Below the pieces are notes generated by a model. The model did not search any database and was not told the origin of the DNA. It saw only the letters and a program-made list of their open reading frames with translations. Positions 4,519-44,025 of a DNA stretch of 64,000 nt are shown one piece after another. Every line of letters starts with the position of its first letter. Position 1 is the stretch's first letter. The position numbers and the translations under genes are program-made. This stretch comes from Octopus sinensis (lineage: Eukaryota): the NCBI RefSeq assembly GCF_006345805.1, contig NC_043005.1, positions 33,232,001 to 33,296,000 of the forward strand. The letters run 5' to 3'.

Positions 4519-5854
4519 TTATATATATATATATATGCGTATATACATGTATACATATGCATAATACATACACGTGTATCTACACACTCATATATACACA
4601 TGCTCGATATACACTCACAGGTCATAGATAAGCCAGATAGATTGATAGGTAGTTAGCAGGTTATGATAGTAGGGTTCGGTTTCAAGTTAAACAGACATGC
4701 GTCGTGATAATGCCGCCAGCTTGACTAAAGACAAGACACGAGTCGGAAGCAAGAAGGAAAAGAAATCAATATACAAGTGCTGCTACCTCTCGGTAGCAAA
4801 AGAAAACAAAATCAAGAAAAGAAAACACTTATCATATGAAATAAAACGGTTAGAAAATGTGTAATTAGTTGAGAAAGGTAGCAAATACATTAGCAATGTA
4901 ACTCTAGCCAGTGGATCTGTTGTTAGGGAGGAGAACAGGTTTTCAGGATTGTCTTAGTTTATTTTATTATTATATTTCTTTGTGGTTTACAGCTTTAGAT
5001 GTGTTTTTATATTAGTTTTTCGTGATTTTCTTTTCTTATTTGGTTTAACCTGCTTCATTTTCGTTCCACTCTCTCTTTTTTAGTTGTTTGCTGATGTAAA
5101 TTATCATTTTGTGGTTGGATACTCCTACTCTACTTACTTTTTCTTCAGTTAATATAATTGTGGATGTTGTTATTGTTATTATTATTATCATTATTGTGGT
5201 TGTTATAGTTTTCATTATTATTATTATTATTGTTGTTGATATTGTTTTTGTGTACGTTGAAGTAGAAGGACGTCTTCAAGAAAGCTACATGAAAAGATGA
5301 ATTTTACCATGATTTATTTGAAGGAAATGTTTGTTTTACTTTTCATTTTGTAAACAGCGGACTTCAATAGCTTTTGGACATCTACCCACATTACTAAGGT
5401 GAGATAATTGGTTCGGCTATTAGACATATTTTTAAAATGTTGTTCTTTTCAAGACACCCAAGATGGATTCTTCTACTTCTAGGTTAGCAATAAGAGATGC
5501 TAACCACAAAAGCCGTATCTGAGGATACACGCTCAAGAATAAAGATTTTTTAAAATTCAGATATAATATAATGCATAGTTTTTTTTTTAAAAAGGGGGAA
5601 AACGGAGATAACTATATTTGTACTAGCAAATGCGGCAAATATTTACTCTTAACACAGCAGAGATTTTACCAAATGAACATAATAAAAAAATTAATCAAAT
5701 TTAACAGAAATGATAGTTGTTTTATCAACATTGCCAATCAGACAGAGGTGCCCGATATAGATGAACACCAGAAAACAGGTACGTGGGAAATATATAATAC
5801 ATAGCACAATGACTAGCCTTGTGCCAAAATTTGAAACAGTTATCATTTTAATTG

Positions 5855-6027
5855 GGGAAAAGAATAGGTCGATACCATCGACCTCGGTATTTGACTAGTA
5901 CCTTATTTCATCAACCTCAAAAGAATGAAAGCCGACAAGATTTGAGGTCAGAAAGTAAAGAGCCGGAAGAAATGCCGCTAAATATTTTTTTAAGACATGC
6001 TAACGATTCTGCTTGCTTGCCGCCTTA
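5855..6027 (-). mobile_element. Degenerate tRNA-headed SINE (family 1)
   Basis: Similar to the clearer copy at 43793-44025 (GCTAACGATTCTG head, TCGAT...TCGAC body). Confidence 0.6.
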
Positions 6028-17857: not shown

Positions 17858-18030
17858 AAAGTATCGAATATGCTCAACCATATTTGTTTCGATACTCTAC
17901 ACTCTGAGTTCAAATCCTATTTACGTCAGCTTTGATTTGCACTTTTCTGAAGGTTGATAATGGAAAATTCTGGGGTCGATGGCATCGACTAACCACCGCC
18001 TCACAATATTACTTACGTTGTGACTAGATC
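17858..18030 (+). mobile_element. Highly degenerate tRNA-headed SINE
   Basis: B-box-like GAGTTCAAATCC followed by GGGGTCGAT..ATCGACTAA as in family 1. Confidence 0.45.
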
Positions 18031-18057
18031 AGAAACCCTTATTATTATCGTCATCAA

Positions 18058-18270
18058 AGACGGTGAGGAGGCAGAATCGTTAGCATACCGGACAAAATGC
18101 TTATTGGCATTTATTCCAGCTGTATATTTTGAGTTCAAATTCCACCGAGGTCAACTTTGTCTTTCCACCTTTCAAGATTGATGAAATAAGTAATGGTTGA
18201 GCATTTGAGTCGATAACATCGACTAATCCCTTCCCTCAAAATTACGAGCCTTGTGACTTAAACAGAAGCC
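18058..18270 (+). mobile_element. tRNA-headed SINE (family 1)
   Basis: GGCAGAATCGTTAGCA head, B box GAGTTCAAATTCC, GAGGTCAACTTTG body. Confidence 0.65.
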
Positions 18271-21600: not shown

Positions 21601-21827
21601 TTTCTTTTGTGATGGACTTCTAGTCCAATATTTTGTATATATTTGTAAGAGGTTTAATACCTCTATATATGTTGTTTTTTAACGAATAATGTTTTAGAAA
21701 AGCAAAGGGTCGGCGGCGCTTTCTGTCTTTATCATCTTGTATAATTATCATTCGCTTCATTAATGTCTTGACCAACCCGCAAATCTACATATCCGTATAC
21801 TGCTTTCATGGCAAATGATATAAAATA

Positions 21828-22211
21828 AAGTAGCTTGCTTACCAGCCACATGGTTCCGGGTTCAGTCCCACTGCGTGGCATCTTGGGCAAGTGCCTTCTA
21901 CTATAGCCTCGGGCCGACCAAAGCCTTGTGAATGGATTTGGTAGACGGAAACTGAAAGGAGCCCGTCGTATATATGTATATATATGTGTATGTGTATGTT
22001 TGTGTGTCTGTGTTTGTCCCTCCTAGCATTGCTTGACAACTAATGCTGGTATGTTTATGTCTCCGTAACTTAGCGTTTCGGCAAAAGAGAACGATAGAAT
22101 AAGTACTAGGCTTACAAAGAATAAGTCTCGGGGTCAATTTGGTCGACTAAAGGCGGTGCTCCAGCATGGCCGCAGTCAAATGACTGAAACAAGTAAATGA
22201 GTAAAAGAGTA
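21828..22211 (+). mobile_element. tRNA-headed SINE (family 2), lacking its first 20 or so nt
   Basis: B-box-like GGTTCAGTCCC, CTTGGGCAAGTG core-like block, internal microsatellite, tail GGCGGTGCTCCAGCATGGCCGCAGTCAAATGACTGAAAC plus short tandem repeats. Confidence 0.9.
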
Positions 22212-23315
22212 TATTGATTTTTGTTGCAGAGAGAGTTTTATTTGATAAATTTATTACTTTGGGTTTTTCCCTCAGGTTTTGTTCCAACGTGTGTCCCTGT
22301 TTCTTTCCACTCGGTCTAAAAAATGTTTATTGTAATTTGGTTGGTAGAAGTTATTAGTATTATTATTGTTGTTAATTATATCAGTTTTATTAATGTTATT
22401 ATTTATTATATTGGCATTGCTGGGGGGTTGGTGTTGCTGTCTGGGTGGAATAAATTGTTGGAGTGCTTAATTATGTTTAGGATGTTGAGGAGTTGGTTGT
22501 GCTGTCTGGGTAAATAGGTTGAGAATCCGTAGGTTGAGCTTCTTCGTTGAGGAGTGGAGGAAATCCTTTGAACGTTTCTAGTTACTAGGAAGAAAAAATT
22601 ACTTCTAACCCTAGGTTGGTTTCTTTTTGTATTTCTTATTAGTGAGTTGTCCCTATTACTAGACTAAGAATGGTTTACTTCCAGGTGAGAAGTCAGTTTT
22701 GTGTGTCTGTGTCCTTTTAGATGTTTATAGTTTGACCTAGGTGGACATGTATTTATTTCTGTAGATGTACTTGTTCCAGGATTTTTCAGGAATGGGGTTA
22801 TCTGAGATTTAGTCTCTTTTAAATTGGGTTTTGTAACTAAGGAAAAAATTAACAATGTTTTCCCATCAGCGCAGGGAATTTATTTTCTCCGACTCTCAGC
22901 TATCTTTCCATAGTTTTATAATACTTTCCAAAAGTTGTTCATCAGCATGTTTAGTGAGTTTGGTGAGCATTTCTTCATCGATCGTTTAATATTTTTGTTC
23001 GTTGTTCGATACTCTAAATTTAAGTAACTCAATCTCTATCTTCATTTTCTCTAGTGCTAATTTCTCCCTAAGCTTTCTTTGTTGTTTGGGTTCTTCTGGG
23101 ATAGGTTTGTTTTTGTGCGGCAGAATTAATGGTGTTTAATTAATCCAGTTTTCAGATAGTTCTGTCTTATTACTATTTTTTATCATGTTCCAAAAATATA
23201 TTTAAAATATATTAAAACGATGTAAAGTGTGTGCATTTTCCTTCTTTAATTTCTTTTATATATATTACAACTCAGCACGTGGGGATAATCGAAATTCCTC
23301 CCTTTCTGTTATATA

Positions 23316-23355
<40 letters not shown>

Positions 23356-23649
23356 TATATAGGAGAATTTGTTTTTGAAAATGCACCTGAATTTTTAAAA
23401 TTTGTAATTATTTTTAAATAAATTTATTTACATACATACCAAACTAGTTTCAAATTTTTTTTTTTATCAATAGTATAAACGTATAAGATTTCAAATATTT
23501 AAAATTGCGAAGTAGAAAACATGTTTAAATGTTCACAAAATTCAATTATGTCAAAAATGATAGGCGAAGGATATAAAAAATATGCATCACCAAAAGTTCG
23601 GACATACTGAGTTAAGAGAGAGAAAAATAAGAAAATATGAGAGTAAAGA

Positions 23650-25580
23650 GATGGTTTTGCTACAGTTTCTGTCATCTTGCGTGTGATTCTGTTTTCCGTC
23701 GCGTACTGGGATTTTTGCTTGTAACGGTTTGTTTGGAATCAGTGTATTTACAATTTTTTTCCGTGAACGGATCTGATTTTTGATTCATTATAGTTCTGAT
23801 ATCTAATTCTTTCTAGTGGTCAAGTTTAGCATTCTGCCTGGTTGACTTCCCTGTGGAGATAGTCATTGAACGTTCCAGCTGGTTGATTCTCTTAAAGGGT
23901 TTATTTGTTTTGTTTTGTTTTTTCCTGAGGGTTCGGTGCTGATCGGAGGCAAAATTTCATTGGTCTAGAGATGGGTGACGTCAGCAACTGGTGTTTGTAT
24001 TGTGCTATTGTATGGTGATTTGGAGTTGCGGTTTCGAAACATGAGTGGAAAGTTTTTGAATTATGTCCGTTGTATCTGGCTATCGTTTTTCTTTTTTTAG
24101 AAATTTAGTTTTTTCTTTATTTTAGTGTTTTTCCCTCTTCCTAAAGGATATTTAGCTGTGGTTTACATTTTTATTGAGTATGCTTTCCTTATTCAATCAG
24201 AATTAGGCTGAAGTGTTTCCAGTGCATTGATAGAGAGGGAAGATTTGGTATTTCGGGTTTATGTTTGCAGGGCATTGGTCTAGGTGTTTGCTTACGGGAA
24301 TTTTCCTCGTCATAGGGTCCTGGATTTTTTGCCTGTGTACTGTCAGTCTGTCCCTCAAGGTCAAACACCCACCACATATCAGGACATAGCTTAAGTTCTT
24401 CGATGCACAGGTGAAGTGATTTTTTTATGGTAAAAGTTTGACCTGATTTAAATTTATATGTTGAGCCCTCCAAGGGGTAGATGCAAGTCCCGCAATTTCG
24501 GCGGTTGCATGGCGTTGTATTTTTGATGGGTAATTTGGTGCTGATGAGTAGCCTTTTTAGGGATTGTGGTTCTTTTTTCATTCGCAGGTCATTCATAAGG
24601 AGGGGTATGTTTTGGTGGATGATGTATGCTTCCATGTTTATCGGACTGTGTGTTCATGCGTAAGATAAAGTTTTAAGTGTGTCATGGGATTTTCTTGTTT
24701 GCCGTAATTCTTGGATGTCTATCGTTTTTGCAAATTCTATTCCGTTTTTGATTTAACTAGCCAGATATTTTCTTGCTAGTAATATGTTTTTAAGTTCTTG
24801 AAGTTGTTTATCTCAGGTTTCGGGATTTGATGCAATCGCGCAAATTCTTCTTGCTAAGTTGAACGGTATATTTATTTTAGTGCGTTTTGAGCGGCAGGAA
24901 AAGAATAAAAGATATTATTATGAGTCCGTTGGTTTGAAGAAAATGTCAGTTTCAATTTCAGTATCAAAGATGTCCAGGAAGGGTAACTATTTGTGGCTGT
25001 ATTCCATTGTAAGTTGGATACTGTCGTTAATACTGTTGATTATGTTTTTAAATTTTAAGTGTTGCTCAAGGCTATGCGACCACAGAATGAAACAATCATC
25101 CAGGTAGCGTTTCCATTTGATAAGTATTTTTAGAAGTTGTCTCCAAATATCAGTCTAGCATGTTCGTATATTTGGACTTCCAAGTATACCATGACAAAGT
25201 TAGCAAACGAAGGAGCTTCCCTTCACAGTGCCCGATTTTTGTCGATAGGTGTCCTCATTGAAGTTGAAGAACTTCTGTAGGATGAACTTTATTCCTTCAG
25301 TGATGAATCCTTTTCTGATTCCGTCAGAAATGTCGTCTAGGATTTTTCCATCCGGAATTGTATGGCTTTTATTCTGTATTCATGAAGAATCGAGGTGTAG
25401 GGATTTATTACCTCGAATGAAACCAGAAGGGAATCATTGCTAGTTTTGTTCAGGAGATGGTTTAAAAAGTCCAGATCATCCCTTATAAAGTTCGATATAA
25501 GTTGGAAAATAGGTTTTAGGAGGACGTCAATAAAGTTACTTTAAAAGATGGAGTATCCCATGCCCTGCACACTTGTAATT
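23650..25580 (-). mobile_element. Decayed Penelope-like element: RT + GIY-YIG
   Basis: FIRDDLDFLNHL, VSFEVINPYTSI (motif A), YRQKSGT.KGS (motif B), KWKRYLDDCFILW (YxDD), then PCNRRNCGTCIY and a GIY-YIG remnant ending near 24140. Confidence 0.85.
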
Positions 25581-25753
25581 TTCATCAACTAAAATATGGT
25601 GCAGATATATGCATGTGACTATTTATATTTGCATCTATCTATATATGCATATGTATACATATGTATATACACACATACACACCCACCCACACACCCACAT
25701 ATATATATATATACAGAGAGAGATAGATATATGAATATATACATATGCATATG

Positions 25754-25800
<47 letters not shown>

Positions 25801-25942
25801 CATAAATGAGGGCAAAGGAAAAAATTTCTAACGCCAAATATGCCGAAAAATTGGACATATTGTCCATTAACCATATAATTTTTTCACAAAACGCACGCTA
25901 CTCGAAAAAAGGTCGACAGAAATTTCTAAAAAATTCCATTAT

Positions 25943-26000
25943 TACCATATCGGACCGATTTCAGAGTTAGCTACTAAGAGCCCTCTCTTCGTCAGTGATA
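25943..26000 (-). ncRNA. Type I hammerhead ribozyme candidate upstream of the PLE
   Basis: Minus strand TATCA-CTGACGA-AGAG-(18 nt)-CTCT-GAAA-TCG-GTC-CGA-TA^TGGTA: intact core, stems I-III formable, AUA cleavage triplet. Confidence 0.7.
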
Positions 26001-26125
26001 CATGTGGCAGAGGAAATAAACGAGATACTTACTCGCACCCATGGAAGAAGCAAACACTAAGTCATGAGCACAACTAAAATTTTTTTCGAAAGAAATATTT
26101 TTTCGAAAGAAATTTTATCCTCATT

Positions 26126-26187
<62 letters not shown>

Positions 26188-26323
26188 GTATGTATTATAT
26201 ATATATATATATATATTTACACACACATACATACATACATACATACATAATACATACATACATACATACATACATACATACATACATACATGGAAACTTA
26301 GCGCATTTAAACCCTTACTTAAC

Positions 26324-26355
<32 letters not shown>

Positions 26356-26884
26356 TATATATTATATATAGTTATGCTTGGGGATGGTCATATTTTACCA
26401 ATTAAACAAATATGTGTGTATATATATATAAATATGAATTAGGGCTCTAGGACCTGCATCCAATCTTCTAAACTTAATGTCTAAACTAGAATTCAGTGCG
26501 TATATAAATAGCATCCAAGCTTAACTTAAATCTGACAGCAAGCGAATCAACCCCACGACACCACCTCCTTACAAAGTTCCGTTTTGTCTGACAGCACTAA
26601 AAACCTATGTGGAATAGATAATAGCTTACACAAGAATCTTACAGAAAATTACATGTAAACAAGTAACCAAACATAATAATTTTAAGTGGTTGGCGAAATA
26701 TCTAGTGAAACTCATAATCTAGATAACAGACTAGAAGTCGTAGTTAAACACCCTACGTATGTTGTTGTTAATGACTACGAGGATAATTTTGCCTCTAACA
26801 TTAGATCCTGGTTAATTAACCCGGTTAAATCTGAAATTAGATTAGTTGGTAAGAAAGTTTTAAGGAGATGCAAAAGGATTTTTT

Positions 26885-27035
26885 TTTTGTAAAGAGTACT
26901 AGGGCGTTACTCAACTTTTAAGCCATTTTATCAATCTCGACTGGATGGAGGATAAAGTTGACTTCTGCGCGGTTTGAACAACACAGAATTTTAACCAAAA
27001 CGTTAACGATACTGCTGATCCACCTTCCTAAGTAA
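26885..27035 (-). mobile_element. Highly degenerate SINE (family 1)
   Basis: AAAGTTGACTTC..CGG.TTTGAAC and CGTTAACGATACTGC blocks resemble family 1. Confidence 0.4.
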
Positions 27036-29183
27036 CAGTTGGAAAGCTGCTATCGTACAACAAAGGAGAAATTCCCAAACTGTCATTTTTTTAGCTTAAC
27101 AATATCGAAAATAAGTATAACAGGAGATTTACCCAGTTTGACATTGTCAAATTTACCACTTTGACTGTCAAATTCTGACCAGTTTGATATTGTCGAATTT
27201 TGCCATTCTAGCTCAAGACACTAAATGATATCGACATTATAATGCATGACACAAAAATCCTATTTCTGTCTAAGATTCTGTTCAAAATTCTGAAGAATTT
27301 GATTCAGTTGATCTTTTAATGTAAATATAAGGTCAAACAGTAATGAAAGAATAAATGATCTTACAAAATTATATATTTTACAGGCACTTAACAGGAACTT
27401 TCATTCTCTACATCAAGGCGATGGATTATCTACATCCATAAATCGCCAGCGTAACACATTAAAGAAGGATATTATTCATATAATAAATAGTTCCGGTCTA
27501 AAATGAAGGTAAGACCTAACTTTACTACAATTAAATTCTGTGATGTTACCATTGCATTAAACCATCTATAAAACCCAATAAAATACCCATTTATATTGCA
27601 AGAGTATGATACCAATCACAATCCTTTTAAAAAAACTTAATCAATTATATAACACGAAGGATTTCTAATATGTTCTAAAATAAATAAAAAAATTGATAAG
27701 CCAGCCTTCTACTACAATAGTACATTTCAAACGAGCGAATTCAATAATAAAATCCCCTTTTTATTTCATCTTTCTCTCCTAAAACTAAGAAGAGGCATAA
27801 GACCAGAACACGGTCAATAACATTGACTGGACTGCGCTATTAGACCGCAGATATCGTGTTTTTATTCATTTTATCATAAGAGAGATTTTTCTTACGGTAA
27901 CTGCAGTGAGTCTGCCTTTAGAAATTGAAATATATCACAAACATATTTTAACTATCCTAACATGCTGTTACGCTTAAGCCCTGATTGGCGCTGATACTGG
28001 CGAATATATATATATAGAGAGAGGGGGAGGGGAGAGAGATAATAAAGTAGAATTCACCTTACAAAGCCGGCAATTGCTTCTATGCTTAGATATAGAAAAT
28101 ATGATCGAAATTCATCCAAAGTTAATTAAATTTAAAGAGAACTAAGGAATTATTTCCCGTACACAATCTCATACAAAAAAAAAACAAACGTAAGAAGCAA
28201 TATAATTTGAGAAAAGCTATTTTGTATTTAGCAATAGGTGACGTCAGTGGATAACAAAAGAATAAAAAATAAAGGTAGGAATTCTACGTTATGTCAATTA
28301 AAAACATAGAGATTTTACGTCACAACAATTAGTTATCTATTTATGAAATATAGTAAAATTTTAACATATGAAAAGCAATTATAATTAAAAATTGAAATAT
28401 TCAAACGCCTTCCGAAATTTGTGGCAACATTTCATTGTAAAATTCCAATTAAAATTCCAATTAAAACTTAATTTAGAATTATATAATATATTTCTTCAAA
28501 ACAAATTCAAAATTTATAAACAAGAGTAAGTCGAAAATGTGTATTGTGAAATAAGCTCTAATCCTGAACTACTTTATTATTCTTTAAATAAAAGTAATTC
28601 CGATTCTGATTGTACGATTAAGTTAACACCTAGTTTTGATATTAATTATAATAATAATATTCTTATCTTAACACCTAATTTTGAAAGGAGGACTAGCAGG
28701 AAGTCTTTTAACCATGGCTACTACATACAAGTGAATAAATACCTATGTAAGTGTAAAAACGAAATTGTCCTTTAGAAAATCAGTGTTTAAGAAAAAATAT
28801 AGTCTATTGGTGTAAGGTAATAACAGGGAATTTTGAGTATTATTACATAGGTTCATCTGCTACAATTTGATAATCTCGATTTCATAATCATTCACGTTCA
28901 TTTAAGTATAGTAGAAAAAGTAATTCTACAAATCTCAGTAAATGCATTTGGGGGTTAAAAGTTAGGAACATTAGATATGATGTAAAGTGGTCCATTATTA
29001 GCTATGCTCCATCGTACAATATTAGAAATTATACTTGTGAACTTGCCTTGAAGAAATGTATTATATAACTACTTCTAGATTAATTTTACTAAATTTTAAT
29101 AGGAATTTTACATACGCATATGCATATACGTATACATATGTGATTATATAATATATATATAATATAAAAAAATATATATATAT

Positions 29184-29347
29184 AGTCGCAGGAGTGGCTG
29201 TGTGGTAAGTAGCTTGCTAATCAACCACATGGTTCCGGGTTCAGTCCCACTGCGTGGCATCTTGGGCAAGTGTTTTCTGCTATAGCCCCGGGCCGACCAA
29301 TGCCTTGTGAGTGGATTTGGTAGACGGAAACTGAAAGAAGCCTGTCG

Positions 29348-29389
<42 letters not shown>

Positions 29390-29600
29390 TGTGTGTCTGT
29401 GTTTGTCCCCCTAGCATTGCTTGACAACCGATGCTGGTGTGTTTACGTCCCCGTTACTTAGCGGTTCGGCAAAAAAAGAGACCGATAGAATAAGTACTGG
29501 GCTTTCAAAGAATAAGTCCCGGGGTTGATTTGCTCGACTAAAGGCGGTGCTCCAGCATGGCCGCAGTCAAATGACTGAAACAAGTAAAAGAGTAAAAAGA
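29184..29600 (+). mobile_element. Full-length tRNA-headed SINE (family 2)
   Basis: A box TGGCTGTGTGG, B box GGTTCAGTCCC, internal (TA)n(TG)n, conserved tail and (AAAAGAGT)-like repeats. Confidence 0.92.
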
Positions 29601-29658
29601 TTAAAAAAATACATATAATATAAATAATTATATATATAATATAAATAATTATATATAT

Positions 29659-29804
29659 AAAGCGACGAAAATATTTTGACAAATTAGATTTAAATGTTGA
29701 AATGAATCTAACGGTTTTTTGTGTGTTTCTTAAATGGCTTATAAACACCTTCCACGCTGCAATTGTTTTCGTTCCAGAACACGATCTACGCAAGTACATC
29801 TCCG

Positions 29805-29807
<3 letters not shown>
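29659..29807. repeat. Single arm of the interspersed repeat that forms the 56891-57110 hairpin
   Basis: AAAGCGACGAAAATATTTTGACAAATT...CACCTTCCACGCTGCAATTGTTTTCG...CAAGTACATCTCCGTAA is homologous to 57009-57174. Confidence 0.75.
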
Positions 29808-29867
<60 letters not shown>

Positions 29868-30216
29868 AGATAAGAAAATGGAGAAATACATCTAAATCAA
29901 ATATCAATTACCAGATAATACTCAATCACATACTTTATTAAACCACCACATAAGAGACTGTAGGGTTAAATATAAAAAACAGAACAAATCAGTGTACATA
30001 AAGGAATGTACATAAAAAAGTGTACATAAAAGAGTAATGTTGTATAATAATTAGAATATATATAAAAAGAATATAAATACAAGTAAATATAAATATAAGT
30101 ATAAATTAGATCTTACAGCTGTTTCGGCCATGTCGATAATTATGTCTCATTTTATACGTTATCCCATAGAGGGTTGCATTTACAACCCCTATATAAATTT
30201 GTATATATATATATAT

Positions 30217-30641
<425 letters not shown>

Positions 30642-31932
30642 TAGGAAGGAAAAAAGGGCATATATATATAAGCTACATAAATGCAGTCTTGGCAATGGTG
30701 GTGCTGCGATCAAATCTATCAACCTCATCAGACTCCCATCACAACTGACTTGAGTTAAGGATGTTACAGTTTCCAATTGGCTGGATTGAAAAGGTACAGT
30801 CGTGATATCTCACAAGTGTTTGATGAAATTTTCGTCAGCACATTTTGGGCAATATAACGCCTTCAGTAATTAATTTAGTTTCTATCTAAGAAGACAAGAA
30901 AGTTGTCTTGCATAAAGATTTATCTTGAAAAACTGGGACAAGCTTCAATCATAAATGCTAACCTGGTTCAGATTTTAATTGTATATTAAATAAGGCTGAT
31001 ATAATCAATGACTGAAGGGGCCGAAAGTCTGTTGTGTGCAATTTATTGTAGGTAGAACTTTTTAGAGTGAAAACGGATAATTTTATTTTGAAAACGGATA
31101 ATTTTATTTTGAATATTCAAAATTTTGGTTTTTAATAAAAAGAATGTTTTTCTAAGGGTAAAAAAATGAAAGTCAAAATTGATTCTGACAATATTTGAAC
31201 ACATATGTAAGAGGTATTAAACCATATATCATTATGTTGGGCACTTTGCCAACTGCATCAACATATCTTCAATCCGTCTTCCTATTACCGATCTACTTAT
31301 ATAATAATAATCTCAATTGCAGCTGTTCAACTGCAGTCCTATTAACTAAGCAACTAATGAATGTCAAATGTGAAAATATGTGCAGATAAAAAACGCTTTA
31401 AGTAAAAATAAGTGCCATTTTAGATTACTCAACCTCTTCAGATTATTCCCCTACTTTTGCTATACAGCAATTTACAATGAGAGATAGAAAGAGAATATGA
31501 TGAGCAGTAAAAATGGAGTACTATAGAACATGCGTGTAATAGATATTGAATTACATTTTGAGAATTTTCTCTCGATTGCAGCTAAAACGAACGCCTCACC
31601 AACATAAGCACTATGTCACAGAAAAATGTTAACCTAATAATTACAAATACAGGACATACCAGAAAATAGAGAGGTAAAGCATAAGATTACGTATTGAAAC
31701 AGACTCCATTAAACACTGATAAAAAATTATGGACAATGAGTTTTATCAAGTGGCTTCGATAAAGAGACTGCTAAGGTTTGATTTACGATGGTGAAGTAAA
31801 TTTATATCTAAAAAAATGCAAATACGCTAAATTACGAAAGATCTTTATACAAGATGTTTGTTAATTATTATTATCATCGTCATCATCACTACAATAGTTA
31901 TTATTATCATTATTATTATTATTTTTTTTTTT

Positions 31933-32418
31933 ATATGGTTGTCTTTTACTTTATATTTGTACACGTTGACGCCAAGTCTCACCCAGGGACCTCAAGGGAC
32001 AAGTTAGAAGTTCAAGTTGGTGTTAGGACTAGGGTGCCATATTTTTGGTTTTGCATAGAGTATTGTTCTAGAGAACGTCTGTCAAAACATAATAAAATAA
32101 GAAGTTTCTTTTAAAAGTAATTTGACGATAAGATGATAATGCGATGTTAAGATGATGCTAAAAGGTGTTTGCTATTATGTACATTTAAAAGTACTTTTAA
32201 CAATGCTTACAGATTAAAATGTTTTGGGGACTACATAGACAATATTTTTCGTAGGATATGAGCAGTTCCCATGAGCACTATTTTTAAAATGTCTTCCATT
32301 TTGGATTTCTTAGTATCTGAGATAACTAGCAATCAGCCATTTTTGCTATCATTCCTAGGGAACCTATGACAATAGGTATTGTTTTAGTCTTTTTGCCAAT
32401 TTCTATTTCCAGATATTA
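31933..32418 (-). mobile_element. R4/Dong-like family A 3-prime fragment, copy 2
   Basis: LEIEIGKKTKTIPIVIGSLGMIAK...KIVLMGTAHILRKILSM plus a 3-prime UTR homologous to 13700-13844; ATT-type microsatellite on both sides. Confidence 0.8.
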
Positions 32419-32437
32419 TTATCATTCTTCTTCTTAT

Positions 32438-32453
32438 TATTATTATTATTATT

Positions 32454-32527
<74 letters not shown>

Positions 32528-32546
32528 TATTATTATTATTATTATT

Positions 32547-32611
<65 letters not shown>

Positions 32612-32632
32612 TATTATTATCATTATTATTTT
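32438..32632. repeat. (ATT)n/(CAT)n compound microsatellite
   Basis: Read directly; explains the poly-H, poly-M and poly-D ORFs. Confidence 0.95.
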
Positions 32633-32721
32633 TTTTATCACGTGCTTTCACTGCAATACTCTAATTTCTGCTGTATTGAAAGTGTTTTACATAGGATGTG
32701 TGCGATGCCTAATATATTATA

Positions 32722-35720
32722 TATAAACTTAGATAAACTTAGATATGTTTCGACCAAAGATTGGTCCAGGCCATGTCTAACTTAATAGCACCGCCTGATA
32801 GGATTATTTGAATCCTGTTTAAGTCAAGTTTTGTTTATGGACCATTCAAGTAGTAAGTTTTTGTTGCAATGTACATGTATGCTGTGATCTTGAATTGGGC
32901 AGAGGACGTATGGCCCGTGGTCCCAGTCTTGGATGAACCTTGAAGCTAATGTTCAGGTCGTTTGGACAAAGTTGGCGGTACATTCTGCACATCGTACAAA
33001 TGATGTACCGCTCACGGCGACGCTGGAGAGAGTAGAGTTTCAAGGCTTTAAGGCGATCCCAATAATCGAGAGCAGCCATGCCTTCAATTCGTTTAGTGAG
33101 TGCCCTCTGAGGTGATTCAATCCTCGAGATGTTTTGTCTTATATGGGGAGACCACAGTGGGCAGCAGTATTCGAGGTGTGGCCGTACAAAGGAGGAGAAA
33201 AGTGGTATGATGATACCTTGTTCTCTGGACCGGAAAGTTCTTAAGATCCGGGAACTCATCCTACGAGCTATATCGACCTTCTTGTTGATGTGTGCACTCC
33301 AACTGAGATCGTCATCAACAATTACACCCAGGTCTCTGATATTGTTAGAGGCTGTGAGCGGTTCCCCTGAAGGAAGAGAGTATGGCTGTTTTAGTGAGGA
33401 ATTTCTTCCAAAATGCATCAGCTCAAATTTTCCCTCGTTCAGTTGCATTTTGTTTCTGTCTGCCCATTGACTCACAGCATATAGATCAGACTGGAGTTCG
33501 GTCTGCTTCTTCATTGACGATTTGCTGGAGCTTAGTGTCATCAGCAAATATTTTCACTTTGCAGTAATGTACGACACTGGAAAGGTCGTTTATGTAAATT
33601 ATGAAGAGTAGCGGACCCAAGACAGTCCCCTGGGGGACACCGCTGGTGATTTTTACTGGGCTTGAGTGGACTCTATCAACTACAACATATTCGCCAGGAA
33701 ATACTTAATCCAGTGTAGAACTTTTCCACGGATTCCAACATTTGCCAATTTTGAGAGTAGGATATTATGGTCTACCCTGTCGAACGCTTTACTGAAGTCA
33801 AGATATATGACATCAGAGTTCGAACCTGTTCCCAAGGCTTTCAGTACATCTTCAATGTGGTGTAAGAGCTGTGTTTGACAGTCCCTCCCACAGCGAAAGC
33901 CACGCTGATTTGTATTTAGGAGTTTGTGGGTCTCCAGGAAGTCAGCTATCCTTGATCTTAACACTCTTTCAAACACTTTAATGATGTGGGAGGTGAGTGA
34001 GATTGGGCGATAGTTGAGTGCGAGGGATCAGTTTCCCTGTTTGAAAACCGGGATGACTGACTGGGATAGAAACTGTTTCGGTATATAACCTGCGTCTAAC
34101 GAATTTCTCCAGAGGTTGGTCAGAGGGACTGCAAGTTGGTGTCTACATTCCTCCAGGAGACTAGCGGGGAATCTATCAGGGCCTACAGCAGAGTACTATT
34201 TGACCTCATTTATTGCTGCTATGATGTCAGTGGCAGTGAAGGTTATGTCTGAGATTTTATGTTGGGAGTCAACTTCGTTCGCTTCTCTTACGTCAATATC
34301 AGTGGGAACACTAAAGACAGAGCAGTATTGTTTCTGCAGTATTTCTGCCATTTCTTTAGTATCGTGTTGGGGAATGTCATCAATCAATGGCCCAATGGGT
34401 GAGACAGTGGTTCTATGCTTTTGGGTTCTGTTTGATGTTTTTGATTACCCACTGTTCCTCCACAGCTCTTTGATTTTCAATGGAGGTTTTCATGTCGGTC
34501 TGCAGATGAAGTTTTTCCAGCTCTAGCCTTTTCATTGTTGTTGAATGTGGATGTTGTATGTGGGAATATTTTAATTGGTTGATTTTTTGTTGAGTCTTTT
34601 GATGCGCCTGATGAGTGTTTTTTTTCTTTTTAGGGAACCGGTTTCTGTTTGTGTTAGTAGATTTCGTGAGAGCGTGTTTAGAGCATGTACAAGTGACAAT
34701 GTTTTCAAAGTGCTGCCATGCGGTCTCAATATGGGTGGAATTGAGAGTAAAAGACCAGTCGATGTAAGACAGATCCTTTCTGATTGCTCCCCAGTCCGCT
34801 TTGTGGAAGTTTATGTTGTCAAATGAGTGCCATGGAGTGGGATTGGCTGGTTTGGTTTTTATATGTCGGGAATTAAAATTGCAGAGTACCATGTCGTGGT
34901 CTGAGAGGAGAGTTTTTTCAACTGAAATACTGTGAACGAAGCTAGAGTGATTGGTCAATACCAGATTCAAGATCGTTTTATTCTGTCTCGTTGGTTCGAG
35001 CACTAGCTGAGTCGGGAAGTATTCATCCATTAGATTAAAGAGCAGTTCTGCTGCTGCTCTATCTGATGTAGAGCATTTGCCTAACTTCAGAGTATTTGTG
35101 GGCCAGTTCACATGAGGGAGGTTAAAATCACCTATCACGAGTATGTTTCCGGAGTTGAACTTCCGAAGGAAGGACTTGACTTTGCTAAGGCACTCTTCAA
35201 AGCACTTTAGAGGTGCTTGGGGAGGCCTGTAAAGACCAACAAGGATTATGTCCTTGGCCTTGCTGAATAGTGATACAGATTCACAATAGCCATTGGAAAA
35301 TATGTCCTTGGCATCAAGTGAAAAGGAGTCATGGATAAAGATGGCTATAAAGATCCCTTATTTCGGTCTGTGCGATCCGCACGAACAATGGTGAAATCTT
35401 TTATTTTCACCTCGGCGTCCATATGGGTGTTGTTCAGGTGAGTCTCGGTAAGGATAAAGAAAGGGTAGCAATGTGCCGTTTCGGCAAGCCAACTCTCTAT
35501 GTATGGGATCTTCCATTTTTGGGCAATAATTGATGGGTTGATGCAACGCACATTTAACAGGAATGTCGAGGTAAGAGAAGTTTGATGTTTGCATTGTTCT
35601 AAGTTATGTTTTATGTTGTTCAGTGGTAACAATGTGGGTAGTTCTTGTATGAAGCTGTGTGTGTATGATTTTCTTGTTGGTAGTGGGTGTGTGGTCCTTG
35701 TGATTTGCATAGGTGGTTGC
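32722..35720 (-). mobile_element. CR1-like LINE: near-complete ORF2 (APE endonuclease + RT) with 3-prime tail
   Basis: APE: FLLNVRCIN, LTETHL, IVRADR, IGDFNLPHVNW, NLVLTN. RT: YRPISLTSHIIK.FER, QRGFR.GRDC.TQLL, YLDFSKAFDRVDH, GVPQG.VLGPLLF, IFADDTK, RDLGV, VRPHLEYC.PLWSP. Several frameshifts. Tail ends in (ATCTAAGTTT)2. Confidence 0.9.
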
Positions 35721-36511: not shown

Positions 36512-37503
<992 letters not shown>

Positions 37504-40305: not shown

Positions 40306-40512
40306 TCCTTTTTTTATTTGTTTCAGTGATGTGACTGCGGACATACTGGAGCACTGCCTTTAGTCGAACAAATCGACCCCAGGACTATTCTTTGAAAGCC
40401 TAGTATTTATTCTGTCGTTTTCTTTTGCCGAACCGCTATGTCACGGCGATGTAAACACACATTCATCGGTTGTCAAGCGATGGTGGGGGGACAAACACAG
40501 ACACACAAACAT

Positions 40513-43664: not shown

Positions 43665-44025
43665 AGATACAAGGCTCGAAATTTTGAGGAAGGTACGAAA
43701 CTGGTTCTTAATCTATCGACCACGAAAGGATGAAAGGCAAAGCTGACCTCGGCGGAATTTGAACTCAGGACGTAAAGACAGACGAAATACCTATTACTAT
43801 TTCTTTACTACCCACAAGGGGCTAAATACAGAGGAGACAAACAAGGACAGACAAACGGATTAAGTCGATTATATCGACCTCAGTGCTTAACTGGTATTTA
43901 ATTTATCGACCCCGAAAAGATGAAAGGCAAAGTCGACCTCGGCGGAATTTGAACTCAGAACGTAAAGACAGACGAAATACCGCTAAGCATTTCACTCGGC
44001 GTGCTAACGTTTCTTCCAGCTCAGC
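43665..44025 (-). mobile_element. tRNA-headed SINE (family 1): young copy joined to a second partial copy
   Basis: Head GCTG.AAGAAACGTTAGCACGCCG, B box GAGTTCAAATTCC; the block GACCTCGGCGGAATTTGAACTCAG.ACGTAAAGACAGACGAAATACC occurs twice (about 43746 and 43935). Confidence 0.9.

What the first reader, a model, noticed from the sequence alone, without database searches (positions are those of the whole stretch)
32722..32795. CR1-like LINE and SINE family 2 share a 3-prime tail with a covarying stem
Seen: the LINE tail (minus) reads GGCGGTGC-tattaagttaga-CATGGCC-tg-GACC-aatcttt-GGTC-GAAAC-then (ATCTAAGTTT)2. The SINE tail (22152-22211, 29543-29600) reads GGCGGTGC-tccag-CATGGCC-gc-AGTC-aaat-GACT-GAAAC-then (AAAAGAGT)-like repeats. 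Three blocks are identical, and the hairpin differs in sequence while keeping its pairing. Established: stringent-type LINEs recognise a 3-prime stem-loop that partner SINEs borrow. Inference: this identifies the mobilising clade and the RT recognition structure for one of the most abundant SINEs here.
Basis: partly seen in the sequence, partly recalled or inferred. Interest (0 to 1): 0.7.

Follow-up and report, generated by a model that had tools for sequence, protein, structure and literature searches.

The report
LINE 3' tail module copied by a SINE
A decayed LINE retrotransposon in this window ends in a small folded RNA module that distant LINE relatives (including a comb-jelly LINE) also carry after their reverse-transcriptase gene, and an abundant local SINE carries a diverged copy of it, a new example of the well-known way SINEs hijack LINE machinery.

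Summary
On the minus strand, 32795..32747 reads GGCGGTGC-12 nt-CATGGCC-TG-hairpin-GAAAC, followed by a 10-nt tandem repeat. All four copies of one SINE family end in GGCGGTGC-5 nt-CATGGCC-G-hairpin-(G)AAAC plus short repeats.

New findings:
- Blocks 1 and 2 are the two strands of a single stem (H2) with a G/G mismatch.
- The variable hairpin (H3) is 6 bp in the LINE and 5 bp in the SINE.
- Seven loci from four LINE families with 45-51% protein identity, one from the ctenophore Bolinopsis, carry the same module just after the ORF2 stop. It covaries among them.
- A covariance model built only from five of those foreign tails picks the window LINE tail as its best hit in the window (E about 0.01). 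So the tail is the LINE's own, not a landed SINE fragment.
- A LINE-only model ranks the SINE tails as the best non-self hits, but weakly (8.6 bits, E about 2.5).

Caveats:
- Generic alignment does not separate the LINE-SINE match from background.
- The two tails differ in loops, H3 sequence and terminal repeat unit, and this LINE copy is dead. It is therefore a cousin of the SINE's mobiliser, not the mobiliser.
- The "CR1" clade label is untested.

This is a new member of a known kind, of moderate interest.

The parts
32864..35575 (-). Degenerate LINE ORF2 with an AP-endonuclease domain, a reverse transcriptase domain and a C-terminal domain. It has several frame changes and stops. No ORF1 was seen.
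   Evidence: Pfam Exo_endo_phos_2 and RVT_1 match. tblastn of the intact relative L047 ORF2 aligns across 35575..32864 at 46-53% identity, with frame changes near 35348, 33692 and 33500. The element is single-copy in the window.
32817..32863 (-). Remnant of the ORF2 C-terminus and a deletion junction. About 65 residues present in relatives are missing here.
   Evidence: L047 C-terminal residues 196-260 have no counterpart. DNA homology to L001 fades at about 32880.
32800..32816 (-). Hairpin H1: AGGAUU-caaau-AAUCCU.
   Evidence: Present in the MFE and centroid folds. Relatives have a hairpin at the same relative position, spanning the ORF2 stop codon.
32767..32797 (-). Hairpin H2: CAGGC-g-GUGCUA-uuaagu-UAG-a-CAU-g-GCCUG. 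It contains the conserved blocks GGCGGUG and (C)AUGGCC as its two strands, with a G/G mismatch.
   Evidence: Fold of the 89-nt tail 32830..32742 has z = -4.4, with 0 of 200 shuffles folding as well. The anchors are conserved in relatives L045-L051. It lies inside the top hit of model R2.
32752..32766 (-). Hairpin H3: GACCAA-ucu-UUGGUC. This is the variable, covarying stem.
   Evidence: Fold. A perfect stem of 6 bp or more occurs in only 1.4% of 17-mers drawn from the window. Compensatory changes are seen against the SINE and against relatives.
32747..32751 (-). Conserved GAAAC junction. Its G can close H3.
   Evidence: Identical in the SINE and in L049/L050. L047 has GAAC and L046/L048 have GGAAC.
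32723..32745 (-). Terminal tandem repeat (ATCTAAGTTT), 2.3 copies. This is the 3' end of the LINE.
   Evidence: Tandem Repeats Finder: period 10, 100% matches.
22152..22211 (+). SINE family 2, copy 1, tail. H2 is GGC-g-GUGC-ucca-GCAU-g-GCC and H3 is CAGUC-aaau-GACUG, followed by AAAC and AAGTAAA-type repeats.
   Evidence: R3 hit at 22150-22190.
29543..29600 (+). SINE family 2, copy 2, tail.
   Evidence: R3 hit at 29541-29581.
30240..30278 (-). SINE family 2, copy 3, tail (GGTGGTGT variant; the stem is kept through G-U pairs).
40320..40358 (-). SINE family 2, copy 4, tail (mutated; stems partly broken).

Best explanation
Window 35575..32723 (minus strand) is an old, inactive copy of an endonuclease-plus-reverse-transcriptase LINE of the CR1/L2 style. 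Its 3' end is the lineage's own RNA tail, made of these parts in order:
- a hairpin H1;
- a stem H2 whose two strands are the conserved words GGCGGUG and UGGCC, with a G/G mismatch;
- a hairpin H3 of free sequence but kept pairing;
- GAAAC;
- a short tandem repeat.

SINE family 2 carries a diverged copy of the H2-H3-GAAAC-repeat module at its 3' end.

Inferred mechanism: the SINE transcript presents this module to the ORF2 protein of an active member of the same LINE lineage. That protein binds the stem-loops and starts target-primed reverse transcription on the terminal repeats, so the SINE is copied in trans.

The LINE copy in the window is a cousin of that mobiliser, not the mobiliser itself.

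Shown here: the anatomy, the conservation in relatives, the covariation, and the model-based matches.

Inferred: protein binding, trans-mobilisation, and which subfamily is the partner.
For: 1. LINE identity: Pfam endonuclease and RT domains match. Collinear protein homology to the intact relative L047 runs through ORF2.

2. The tail is LINE-intrinsic. L045, L046 and L048 (Bolinopsis microptera), L047, L049, L050 and L051 share 45-51% C-terminal protein identity with the window LINE. Each carries GG[C/U]GGUGG about 13-20 nt after its ORF2 stop. In L045-L050 this is followed by UGGCCU[G/A], a hairpin, GAA(A)C and short repeats. L051 keeps GGCGGUGG and two hairpins but has neither UGGCC nor GAA(A)C.

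3. Covariation among relatives: 13 pairs, 98.5% of cells paired against 20-49% for slid controls, and 5 pairs with compensatory double changes.

4. Model R2 was built from those foreign tails only. Scanned over the whole window with filters off, its best hit is exactly 32797..32747 on the minus strand (15.8 bits, E=0.012). It also finds the non-training relative L051 (E=0.004).

5. The LINE-only model R3 gives the SINE tails as the best non-self hits in the window (ranks 2, 3 and 5; 8.6 bits). They align end to end, from 2 nt before GGCGGUG to GAAAC.

6. H3: 3 of 5 pairs show double compensatory changes between the LINE and the SINE. In a manual structural alignment of six tails, 29 of 30 cells are paired with 2-3 pair types per position. 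Such stems are rare by chance, at 1.4% and 2.3%.

7. The LINE tail fold has z = -4.4.

8. The octopus-type details GGCGGUGC and CAUGGCC are shared only by the window LINE and the SINE. Relatives have GGCGGUGG and CUUGGCC.
Against: - Only one copy of this LINE family was available. No other copy with a 3' end could be retrieved, because the L001 and L002 contigs stop before the tail.
- The SINE match to the LINE models is weak on its own (E 2.2-4.6).
- Generic alignment is not significant.
- The SINE-only model misses the LINE tail.
- The H2 loops differ (UUAAGU against UCCA), the H3 loops differ (UCU against AAAU), and the terminal repeat units differ (ATCTAAGTTT against AAGTAAAAG). In L2-clade LINEs the loop decides which ORF2 protein accepts a tail (PMC4176376).
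- The window copy has a deletion of about 65 codons directly upstream of the tail. The tail could therefore come from a second, short 5'-truncated insertion of a related LINE.
- The SINE H1 hairpin is shared with other SINE families that have different tails, so H1 may not be LINE-derived in the SINE.
- The H2 pairing register differs between the ctenophore-type and octopus-type tails.
- Relatives L003, L052 and L053 lack the module.
Confidence: 0.75

Rival explanations
1. Chance resemblance. Two short GC-rich words and GAAAC happen to recur at a LINE end and a SINE end, and the hairpins are incidental.
For: Generic local alignment does not separate the LINE tail from background. The SINE-only CM does not find the LINE tail. 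SINE hits to the LINE models have E of about 2-5. The next-best two-block match in the window (7+7) is not far below the observed 9+7.
Against: The split pattern has 0 matches in 100 shuffles. The matched blocks span the SINE tail from its first to its last base and sit in the same order directly before the terminal repeats in both elements. The SINE tails are the top non-self family for a model that never saw them; the four tails cover about 160 of 128,000 scanned positions. Both elements have a rare perfect stem at the same place. The same words are conserved in foreign LINE tails.
Confidence: 0.1
2. A fragment of a SINE, or of an unknown SINE relative, landed at the truncated 3' end of the LINE, so the tail is not the LINE's own.
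For: The window copy lacks about 65 codons of ORF2 immediately upstream of the tail, so there is a discontinuity there. No second copy of this LINE family with a 3' end was obtained.
Against: Relatives in other phyla carry the module right after their ORF2 stop. The window tail scores higher against the foreign-LINE model than the SINE tails do (15.8 against 8.2 bits) and shares LINE-only details: GGCCUGG, and an H3 with U-G and G-C closing pairs plus a bulge, as in L046/L048. The SINE model does not recognise it. No SINE body sequence lies upstream of it.
Confidence: 0.05
3. The tail at 32722-32830 is a separate, very short 5'-truncated insertion of a related LINE of the same lineage, sitting next to an older 3'-deleted LINE. 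It is still a LINE tail, but not the tail of the ORF2 upstream of it.
For: A deletion-like junction lies just upstream of H1. Short 5'-truncated LINE copies are common (established knowledge).
Against: This would need the same strand, the same lineage and an exact position at the expected 3' end, which would be a coincidence. A simple internal deletion in an old copy explains the same data.
Confidence: 0.1

Closest known systems
UnaL2/UnaSINE1 (eel) and ZfL2-1/ZfL2-2 (zebrafish): stringent-type L2-clade LINEs with a 3' stem-loop and terminal repeats (Hayashi et al. 2014, PMC4176376; Kajikawa and Okada 2002, from memory)
   Same: The LINE and its partner SINE share a 3' tail. The tail is a stem-loop followed by short tandem repeats rather than poly(A). 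The stem must be paired but its sequence can change, while the loops give specificity.
   Different: Here there are two or three adjacent hairpins, with conserved words GGCGGUG and UGGCC. No Rfam family matches, neither at gathering score over the whole window nor at E<=5 over 21700-33000, which covers the LINE tail and three of the four SINE tails. The LINE and SINE tails here are only about 66% identical, with two gaps, and have different repeat units. There are no functional data.
CR1 LINEs and the tortoise Pol III/SINE; the CR1 3' hairpin plus octamer microsatellite (Ohshima et al. 1996; Suh 2015; from memory)
   Same: The ORF2 has an endonuclease and an RT domain. The C-terminal region has an HLEYC..W.P-type motif. 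The 3' end is a hairpin plus a microsatellite-like repeat that partner SINEs copy.
   Different: Clade membership was not tested by phylogeny. The repeat unit and hairpin sequence are unrelated to amniote CR1. ORF1 is absent from this copy.
Bivalve tRNA-derived SINEs that rely on multiple LINE partners (Mob DNA 2024, PMC11481361), and the mollusc SINE surveys PMC4758252 and PMC4824008
   Same: These are mollusc SINEs built from modules (head, conserved body, LINE-derived tail). Families share bodies but carry different tails.
   Different: These papers cover bivalves and gastropods. For octopus they mention only the OR1/OR2 CORE-SINEs. I found no description of this tail or this partner.
Octopus SINEs OK, OR1 and OR2 (Ohshima and Okada 1994) and the octopus SINE expansion (Albertin et al. 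2015), cited
   Same: These are abundant SINEs in octopus genomes with tRNA-like heads. The window SINE has A-box-like and B-box-like motifs.
   Different: I could not compare sequences, because those papers and Repbase are not available here. ARAGORN and Rfam do not call the head a tRNA.

Membership tests
SINE-LINE common-tail partnership (stringent type) | The SINE 3' end is homologous to the 3' end of a LINE in the same genome. | tested here: met
   There are three collinear identical blocks (9, 7 and 5 nt) and 27 of 41 SINE positions are identical. The SINE tails are the best non-self hits of the LINE-only CM, although at E of about 2.5. Generic alignment is not significant.
SINE-LINE common-tail partnership (stringent type) | The tail folds into a stem-loop kept by compensatory change. 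| tested here: met
   Covariation rests on about five independent lineages.
SINE-LINE common-tail partnership (stringent type) | Both elements end in short tandem repeats, not poly(A). | tested here: met
   The LINE has (ATCTAAGTTT) x 2.3. The SINE has AAGTAAAAG/AGTAAAAG repeats decaying into A-rich sequence.
SINE-LINE common-tail partnership (stringent type) | The LINE and the SINE have the same terminal repeat unit and the same loops, as in cognate pairs. | tested here: not met
   The repeat units differ and share only an AAGT core. The H2 and H3 loops differ. So this LINE copy or family is not the cognate partner.
SINE-LINE common-tail partnership (stringent type) | The LINE ORF2 protein mobilises the SINE in trans. 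| not testable with these tools
   This needs a retrotransposition assay.
CR1 clade (or the wider CR1/L2 group) of non-LTR retrotransposons | ORF2 contains an AP-endonuclease followed by a reverse transcriptase. | tested here: met
   Pfam PF14529 and PF00078 match. Collinear homology to relatives with the same domains.
CR1 clade (or the wider CR1/L2 group) of non-LTR retrotransposons | The RT domain groups with CR1 reference elements in a phylogeny. | not testable with these tools
   No reference LINE library was available. The homologues returned carry no clade names.
CR1 clade (or the wider CR1/L2 group) of non-LTR retrotransposons | The 3' UTR hairpin is followed by a microsatellite-like repeat. 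| tested here: met
CR1 clade (or the wider CR1/L2 group) of non-LTR retrotransposons | An ORF1 lies upstream of ORF2. | tested here: inconclusive
   No ORF1-like reading frame lies upstream of 35710. The copy may be 5' truncated.
Rfam LINE 3' elements, or any Rfam family | The sequence scores above threshold against a curated covariance model. | tested here: not met
   No hit at gathering score in the window. At E<=5 over 21700-33000, which covers the LINE tail and three of the four SINE tails, only microsatellite-driven miRNA-like hits appear and nothing falls on the tails.
tRNA-derived SINE | The head is recognisable as a tRNA, with A and B boxes. | tested here: inconclusive
   A-box-like TGGCTGTGTGG and B-box-like GGTTCAGTCCC are seen by eye. 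ARAGORN finds no tRNA and Rfam gives no tRNA hit.

The most novel reading that the evidence does not exclude
The H1 / GGCGGUG-UGGCC stem / free-sequence hairpin / GAAAC / AAGT-type repeat module is an ancient 3' UTR RNA element of one LINE lineage. It is kept at the level of primary-sequence anchors from ctenophores to cephalopods. It is also the handle through which one of the major octopus SINE families was amplified. That would point to a CR1/L2-style LINE, not the RTE elements so far highlighted in octopus, as the driver of that SINE expansion, and would give a defined RNA-protein pair to test.
Probability: 0.4. Interest if true: 0.6.

Novelty: new member of a known kind. Interest (0 to 1): 0.5.

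Why it matters
SINE expansion is a hallmark of octopus genomes. In the papers I could search, no LINE partner is named for these SINEs, and attention has gone to RTE elements (PMC9115989). A shared, structured tail narrows the search for the mobilising LINE to one lineage. It also gives a concrete RNA element, with natural compensatory variants, for binding and retrotransposition assays. The conservation of the same anchors in ctenophore LINEs suggests long-term constraint on how this lineage's ORF2 protein recognises its template. The principle itself, that SINEs borrow the tails of stringent LINEs, is textbook, so this is an instance of it and not a new mechanism.

Tried and rejected
- A SINE-only covariance model (R1) scanned over the window did not find the LINE tail at E<=10. 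It instead revealed that the SINE H1 hairpin is shared with other SINE families.
- Gapped local alignment of the SINE tail against the window, under four scoring schemes, did not make the LINE tail stand out.
- Pattern scans for LINE-type tails in metagenome contigs, genome contigs and viral contigs returned only GC-rich bacterial or phage chance matches.
- The closest protein relatives, P0001 (73%) and P0003 (71%), sit on 934-bp and 542-bp contigs that end before any tail. No second copy of the same LINE family could therefore be examined.
- Rfam, at gathering and E-value thresholds, and ARAGORN found nothing relevant.
- Literature searches for an octopus SINE-LINE partner or for Repbase names found nothing.
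- I first read H1 as a third covarying stem shared by the LINE and the SINE. I downgraded this because the SINE H1 belongs to a body module common to SINE families with other tails.
- Relatives L003, L052 and L053 lack the module, so it is not universal among the homologues retrieved.
Full report
**What is at the coordinates.**
- Read on the minus strand, 32830..32722 is ...AACAGGATTCAAATAATCCTATCA-GGCGGTGC-TATTAAGTTAGA-CATGGCC-TG-GACCAATCTTTGGTC-GAAAC-AT-(ATCTAAGTTT)2-ATAT.
- Tandem Repeats Finder confirms the terminal repeat at 32723-32745: period 10, 2.3 copies, 100% matches.
- A self-BLAST finds four copies of this SINE: about 21850-22215 (+), 29229-29597 (+), 30640-30233 (-) and 40541-40313 (-). 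The last two carry point mutations in the tail.

**The LINE.**
- Upstream on the same strand lies a decayed non-LTR element.
- Pfam finds an endonuclease domain (PF14529) and a reverse transcriptase domain (PF00078) in its ORF fragments.
- tblastn with the intact ORF2 of a relative (L047) aligns collinearly from 35575 to 32864 at 46-53% identity, with frame changes near 35348, 33692 and 33500.
- The C-terminal piece has the RPHLEYC..W.P and SLQRRR motifs. From memory, these are typical of the CR1/L2 group.
- No RT phylogeny could be run, so "CR1-like" holds only at the level of architecture and 3' end style.
- The copy is single in the window.
- It lacks about 65 C-terminal codons that relatives have, and the gap lies immediately upstream of the tail.

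**Is the LINE-SINE resemblance more than chance?** The evidence is mixed when only the two sequences are compared.
- For a real match:
  - The split word GGCGGTGC-N3-16-CATGGCC occurs three times in the window against none in 100 shuffles.
  - Among all non-SINE sequence, the LINE tail is the best two-block collinear exact match to the SINE tail (9+7 nt; the next best is 7+7).
- Against:
  - Ordinary gapped local alignment does not lift the LINE tail above background; 10-60 of 4126 tiles score as well.
  - A covariance model built from the four SINE tails (R1) does not retrieve it at E<=10.
- In the MAFFT alignment, 27 of 41 SINE positions are identical, with gaps of 7 and 3 nt.

**Structure.**
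- The 89-nt LINE tail (32830..32742) folds into three adjacent hairpins with an MFE of -27.1 kcal/mol and z = -4.4; none of 200 shuffles folds as well. The hairpins are:
  - H1: AGGAUU-caaau-AAUCCU.
  - H2: CAGGC-g-GUGCUA-uuaagu-UAG-a-CAU-g-GCCUG.
  - H3: GACCAA-ucu-UUGGUC, followed by GAAAC.
- The SINE tails fold as follows, with weaker z-scores of -0.5 to -2.3:
  - H1: GGUCGA-uuugc-UCGACU.
  - H2: GGC-g-GUGC-ucca-GCAU-g-GCC.
  - H3: CAGUC-aaau-GACUG, followed by AAAC.
The "covarying stem" is 6 bp in the LINE and 5 bp in the SINE.
- On the MAFFT alignment, three H3 pairs change on both sides between the LINE and the SINE (G-C to A-U, A-U to G-C, C-G to U-A). 95.5% of cells are paired, against 20-50% for slid controls.
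- Perfect stems of this length are rare in random segments of the window: 1.4% for 6 bp or more in 17-mers, and 2.3% for 5 bp or more in 15-mers.

**The decisive evidence comes from relatives.**
- A protein search with the LINE C-terminus gave about 800 homologues.
- The two closest, at 73% and 71% identity, sit on contigs too short to show a 3' end.
- Relatives at 45-51% identity do show their 3' ends. These are L045 and L046 (ENA), L048 (Bolinopsis microptera chromosome), L047, L049, L050 and L051 (JGI). Each has the following:
  - a hairpin spanning the ORF2 stop codon;
  - the word GG[C/U]GGUGG 4-10 nt further on;
  - in L045-L050, then a stem-loop, UGGCCU[G/A], a second hairpin, GAA(A)C, and short repeats such as (CCCAAGTAA)n or (CCCTAGGTA)n.
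- L051 keeps GGCGGUGG and two hairpins but has neither UGGCC nor GAA(A)C.
- Among five of these tails, the H2+H3 structure has 98.5% of cells paired (slid controls 20-49%) and five pairs with compensatory double changes.
- A manual structural alignment of H3 across six tails, including the window LINE and the SINE, keeps 29 of 30 cells paired, with two to three pair types at four of five positions.

**Independent model tests.**
- Model R2 was built only from the five foreign tails.
  - Scanned over all 64 kb on both strands with filters off, its best hit is exactly 32797..32747 (-), at 15.8 bits and E=0.012.
  - Three SINE tails rank 3rd, 4th and 6th, at 8.2, 8.2 and 7.1 bits.
  - R2 also detects the non-training relative L051 at the expected place (E=0.004).
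- Model R3 is LINE-only, made from the foreign tails plus the window LINE.
  - It gives the SINE tails as the best non-self hits in the window (ranks 2, 3 and 5; 8.6 bits; E=2.5).
  - They align from 2 nt before GGCGGUG to GAAAC.
- The E-values are rough and the SINE hits are not significant on their own. However, the four SINE tails occupy only about 160 of the 128,000 positions scanned, so their being the top non-self family is unlikely by chance.
- The window LINE tail shares LINE-only details with the relatives: GGCCUGG, and an H3 closed by U-G and G-C pairs with a bulge. It also scores higher than the SINE tails. This argues against the scenario of a SINE fragment landing there, as does the failure of the SINE model R1 to recognise it.

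**What the finding does not show.**
- The window LINE and the SINE share octopus-type details, GGCGGUGC and CAUGGCC, where relatives have GGCGGUGG and CUUGGCC.
- They differ in the H2 loop (UUAAGU against UCCA), in H3 sequence and loop, and in the repeat unit (ATCTAAGTTT against AAGTAAAAG). All the repeats share an AAGT/AGGT core.
- In zebrafish L2 LINEs, the loop is specifically recognised by the cognate ORF2 protein, while the stem is needed as a structure (PMC4176376).
- By that analogy, the SINE's mobiliser should be another subfamily of this lineage, not this dead copy.
- The SINE's H1 hairpin (GGGGTCGAT...TCGACTAA) recurs in other SINE families whose sequence diverges right after it.
- The pairing register of H2 differs between tail types. 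Relatives pair GGU with GCC, while the window LINE and the SINE pair GGC with GCC. The primary-sequence anchors are conserved regardless. This is unexplained.
- Relatives L003, L052 and L053 lack the module.

**Comparison with known systems and novelty.**
- The system works like the classical stringent-type LINE/SINE pairs, such as UnaL2/UnaSINE1, ZfL2, and CR1 with the tortoise SINE.
- No Rfam family matches: none at gathering score over the whole window, and none on the tails at E<=5 over 21700-33000, which covers the LINE tail and three of the four SINE tails.
- In the searchable literature I found no description of a LINE partner for octopus SINEs. The one octopus LINE study emphasises RTE and Dong elements.
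- That the window is octopus DNA is my recollection of these SINE sequences and was not tested.
- I rate this a new member of a known kind. It has a moderately interesting extra: the tail's anchors are conserved between a cephalopod-type LINE and ctenophore LINEs.

Noticed in passing
window 5845-5887 (-), 17970-18036 (+), 18204-18263 (+), 43858-43883 (-): Other SINE families carry the same hairpin module as SINE family 2 (GGGGTCGAT-4/5 nt-ATCGACT[T]AA, preceded by ATAAGTAC-like sequence) but continue into different tails. This suggests modular SINE construction with a shared body hairpin.
   Followed up: partly
L046 3300-3371; L048 2812-2881: In the ctenophore-type LINE tail, the segment G[U/C]GCUAC just upstream of H2 can pair in two ways. 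It can pair with GUGGCAC inside the last ORF2 codons, forming H1. Or it can pair with GUAGCAC downstream of H2, enclosing H2. These are mutually exclusive alternatives that could act as a switch.
   Followed up: no
window 32769-32795 (-) compared with L049 1646-1673: The conserved word GGCGGUG is used in two pairing registers. Relatives pair GGU with GCC, and the window LINE and SINE pair GGC with GCC. Both have a G/G mismatch next to the 3-bp base.
   Followed up: partly
window 32454-32623: An (ATC)57 microsatellite with 97% matches lies about 100 nt downstream of the LINE 3' end. It creates long spurious His/Asp/Met/Ile ORFs.
   Followed up: no
window 25600-25800, 26180-26390, 23290-23375, 29796-29873, 30439-30566: TA/TG microsatellites, some inside SINE copies, give sub-threshold Rfam hits to mir-297, mir-466, mir-1277 and mir-3149. 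These are composition artefacts.
   Followed up: no
window 36938-37285 (+): A 115-aa ORF just upstream of the LINE has weak helix-turn-helix matches below threshold (HTH_29, HTH_6; E about 0.008). It may be a remnant of the N-terminus of a DNA-transposon transposase.
   Followed up: partly
L003 3001-7023: The 50%-identical relative P0002 is followed, 33 nt after its stop codon, by the start of another endonuclease-RT ORF, with no recognisable tail between them. This looks like a tandem or nested LINE arrangement.
   Followed up: no
window 17953-18002 (-): The antisense strand of a family-1 SINE copy contains GAGGCGGTGG and gives a weak R3 hit (7.9 bits, E=3.9). This is probably chance.
   Followed up: no
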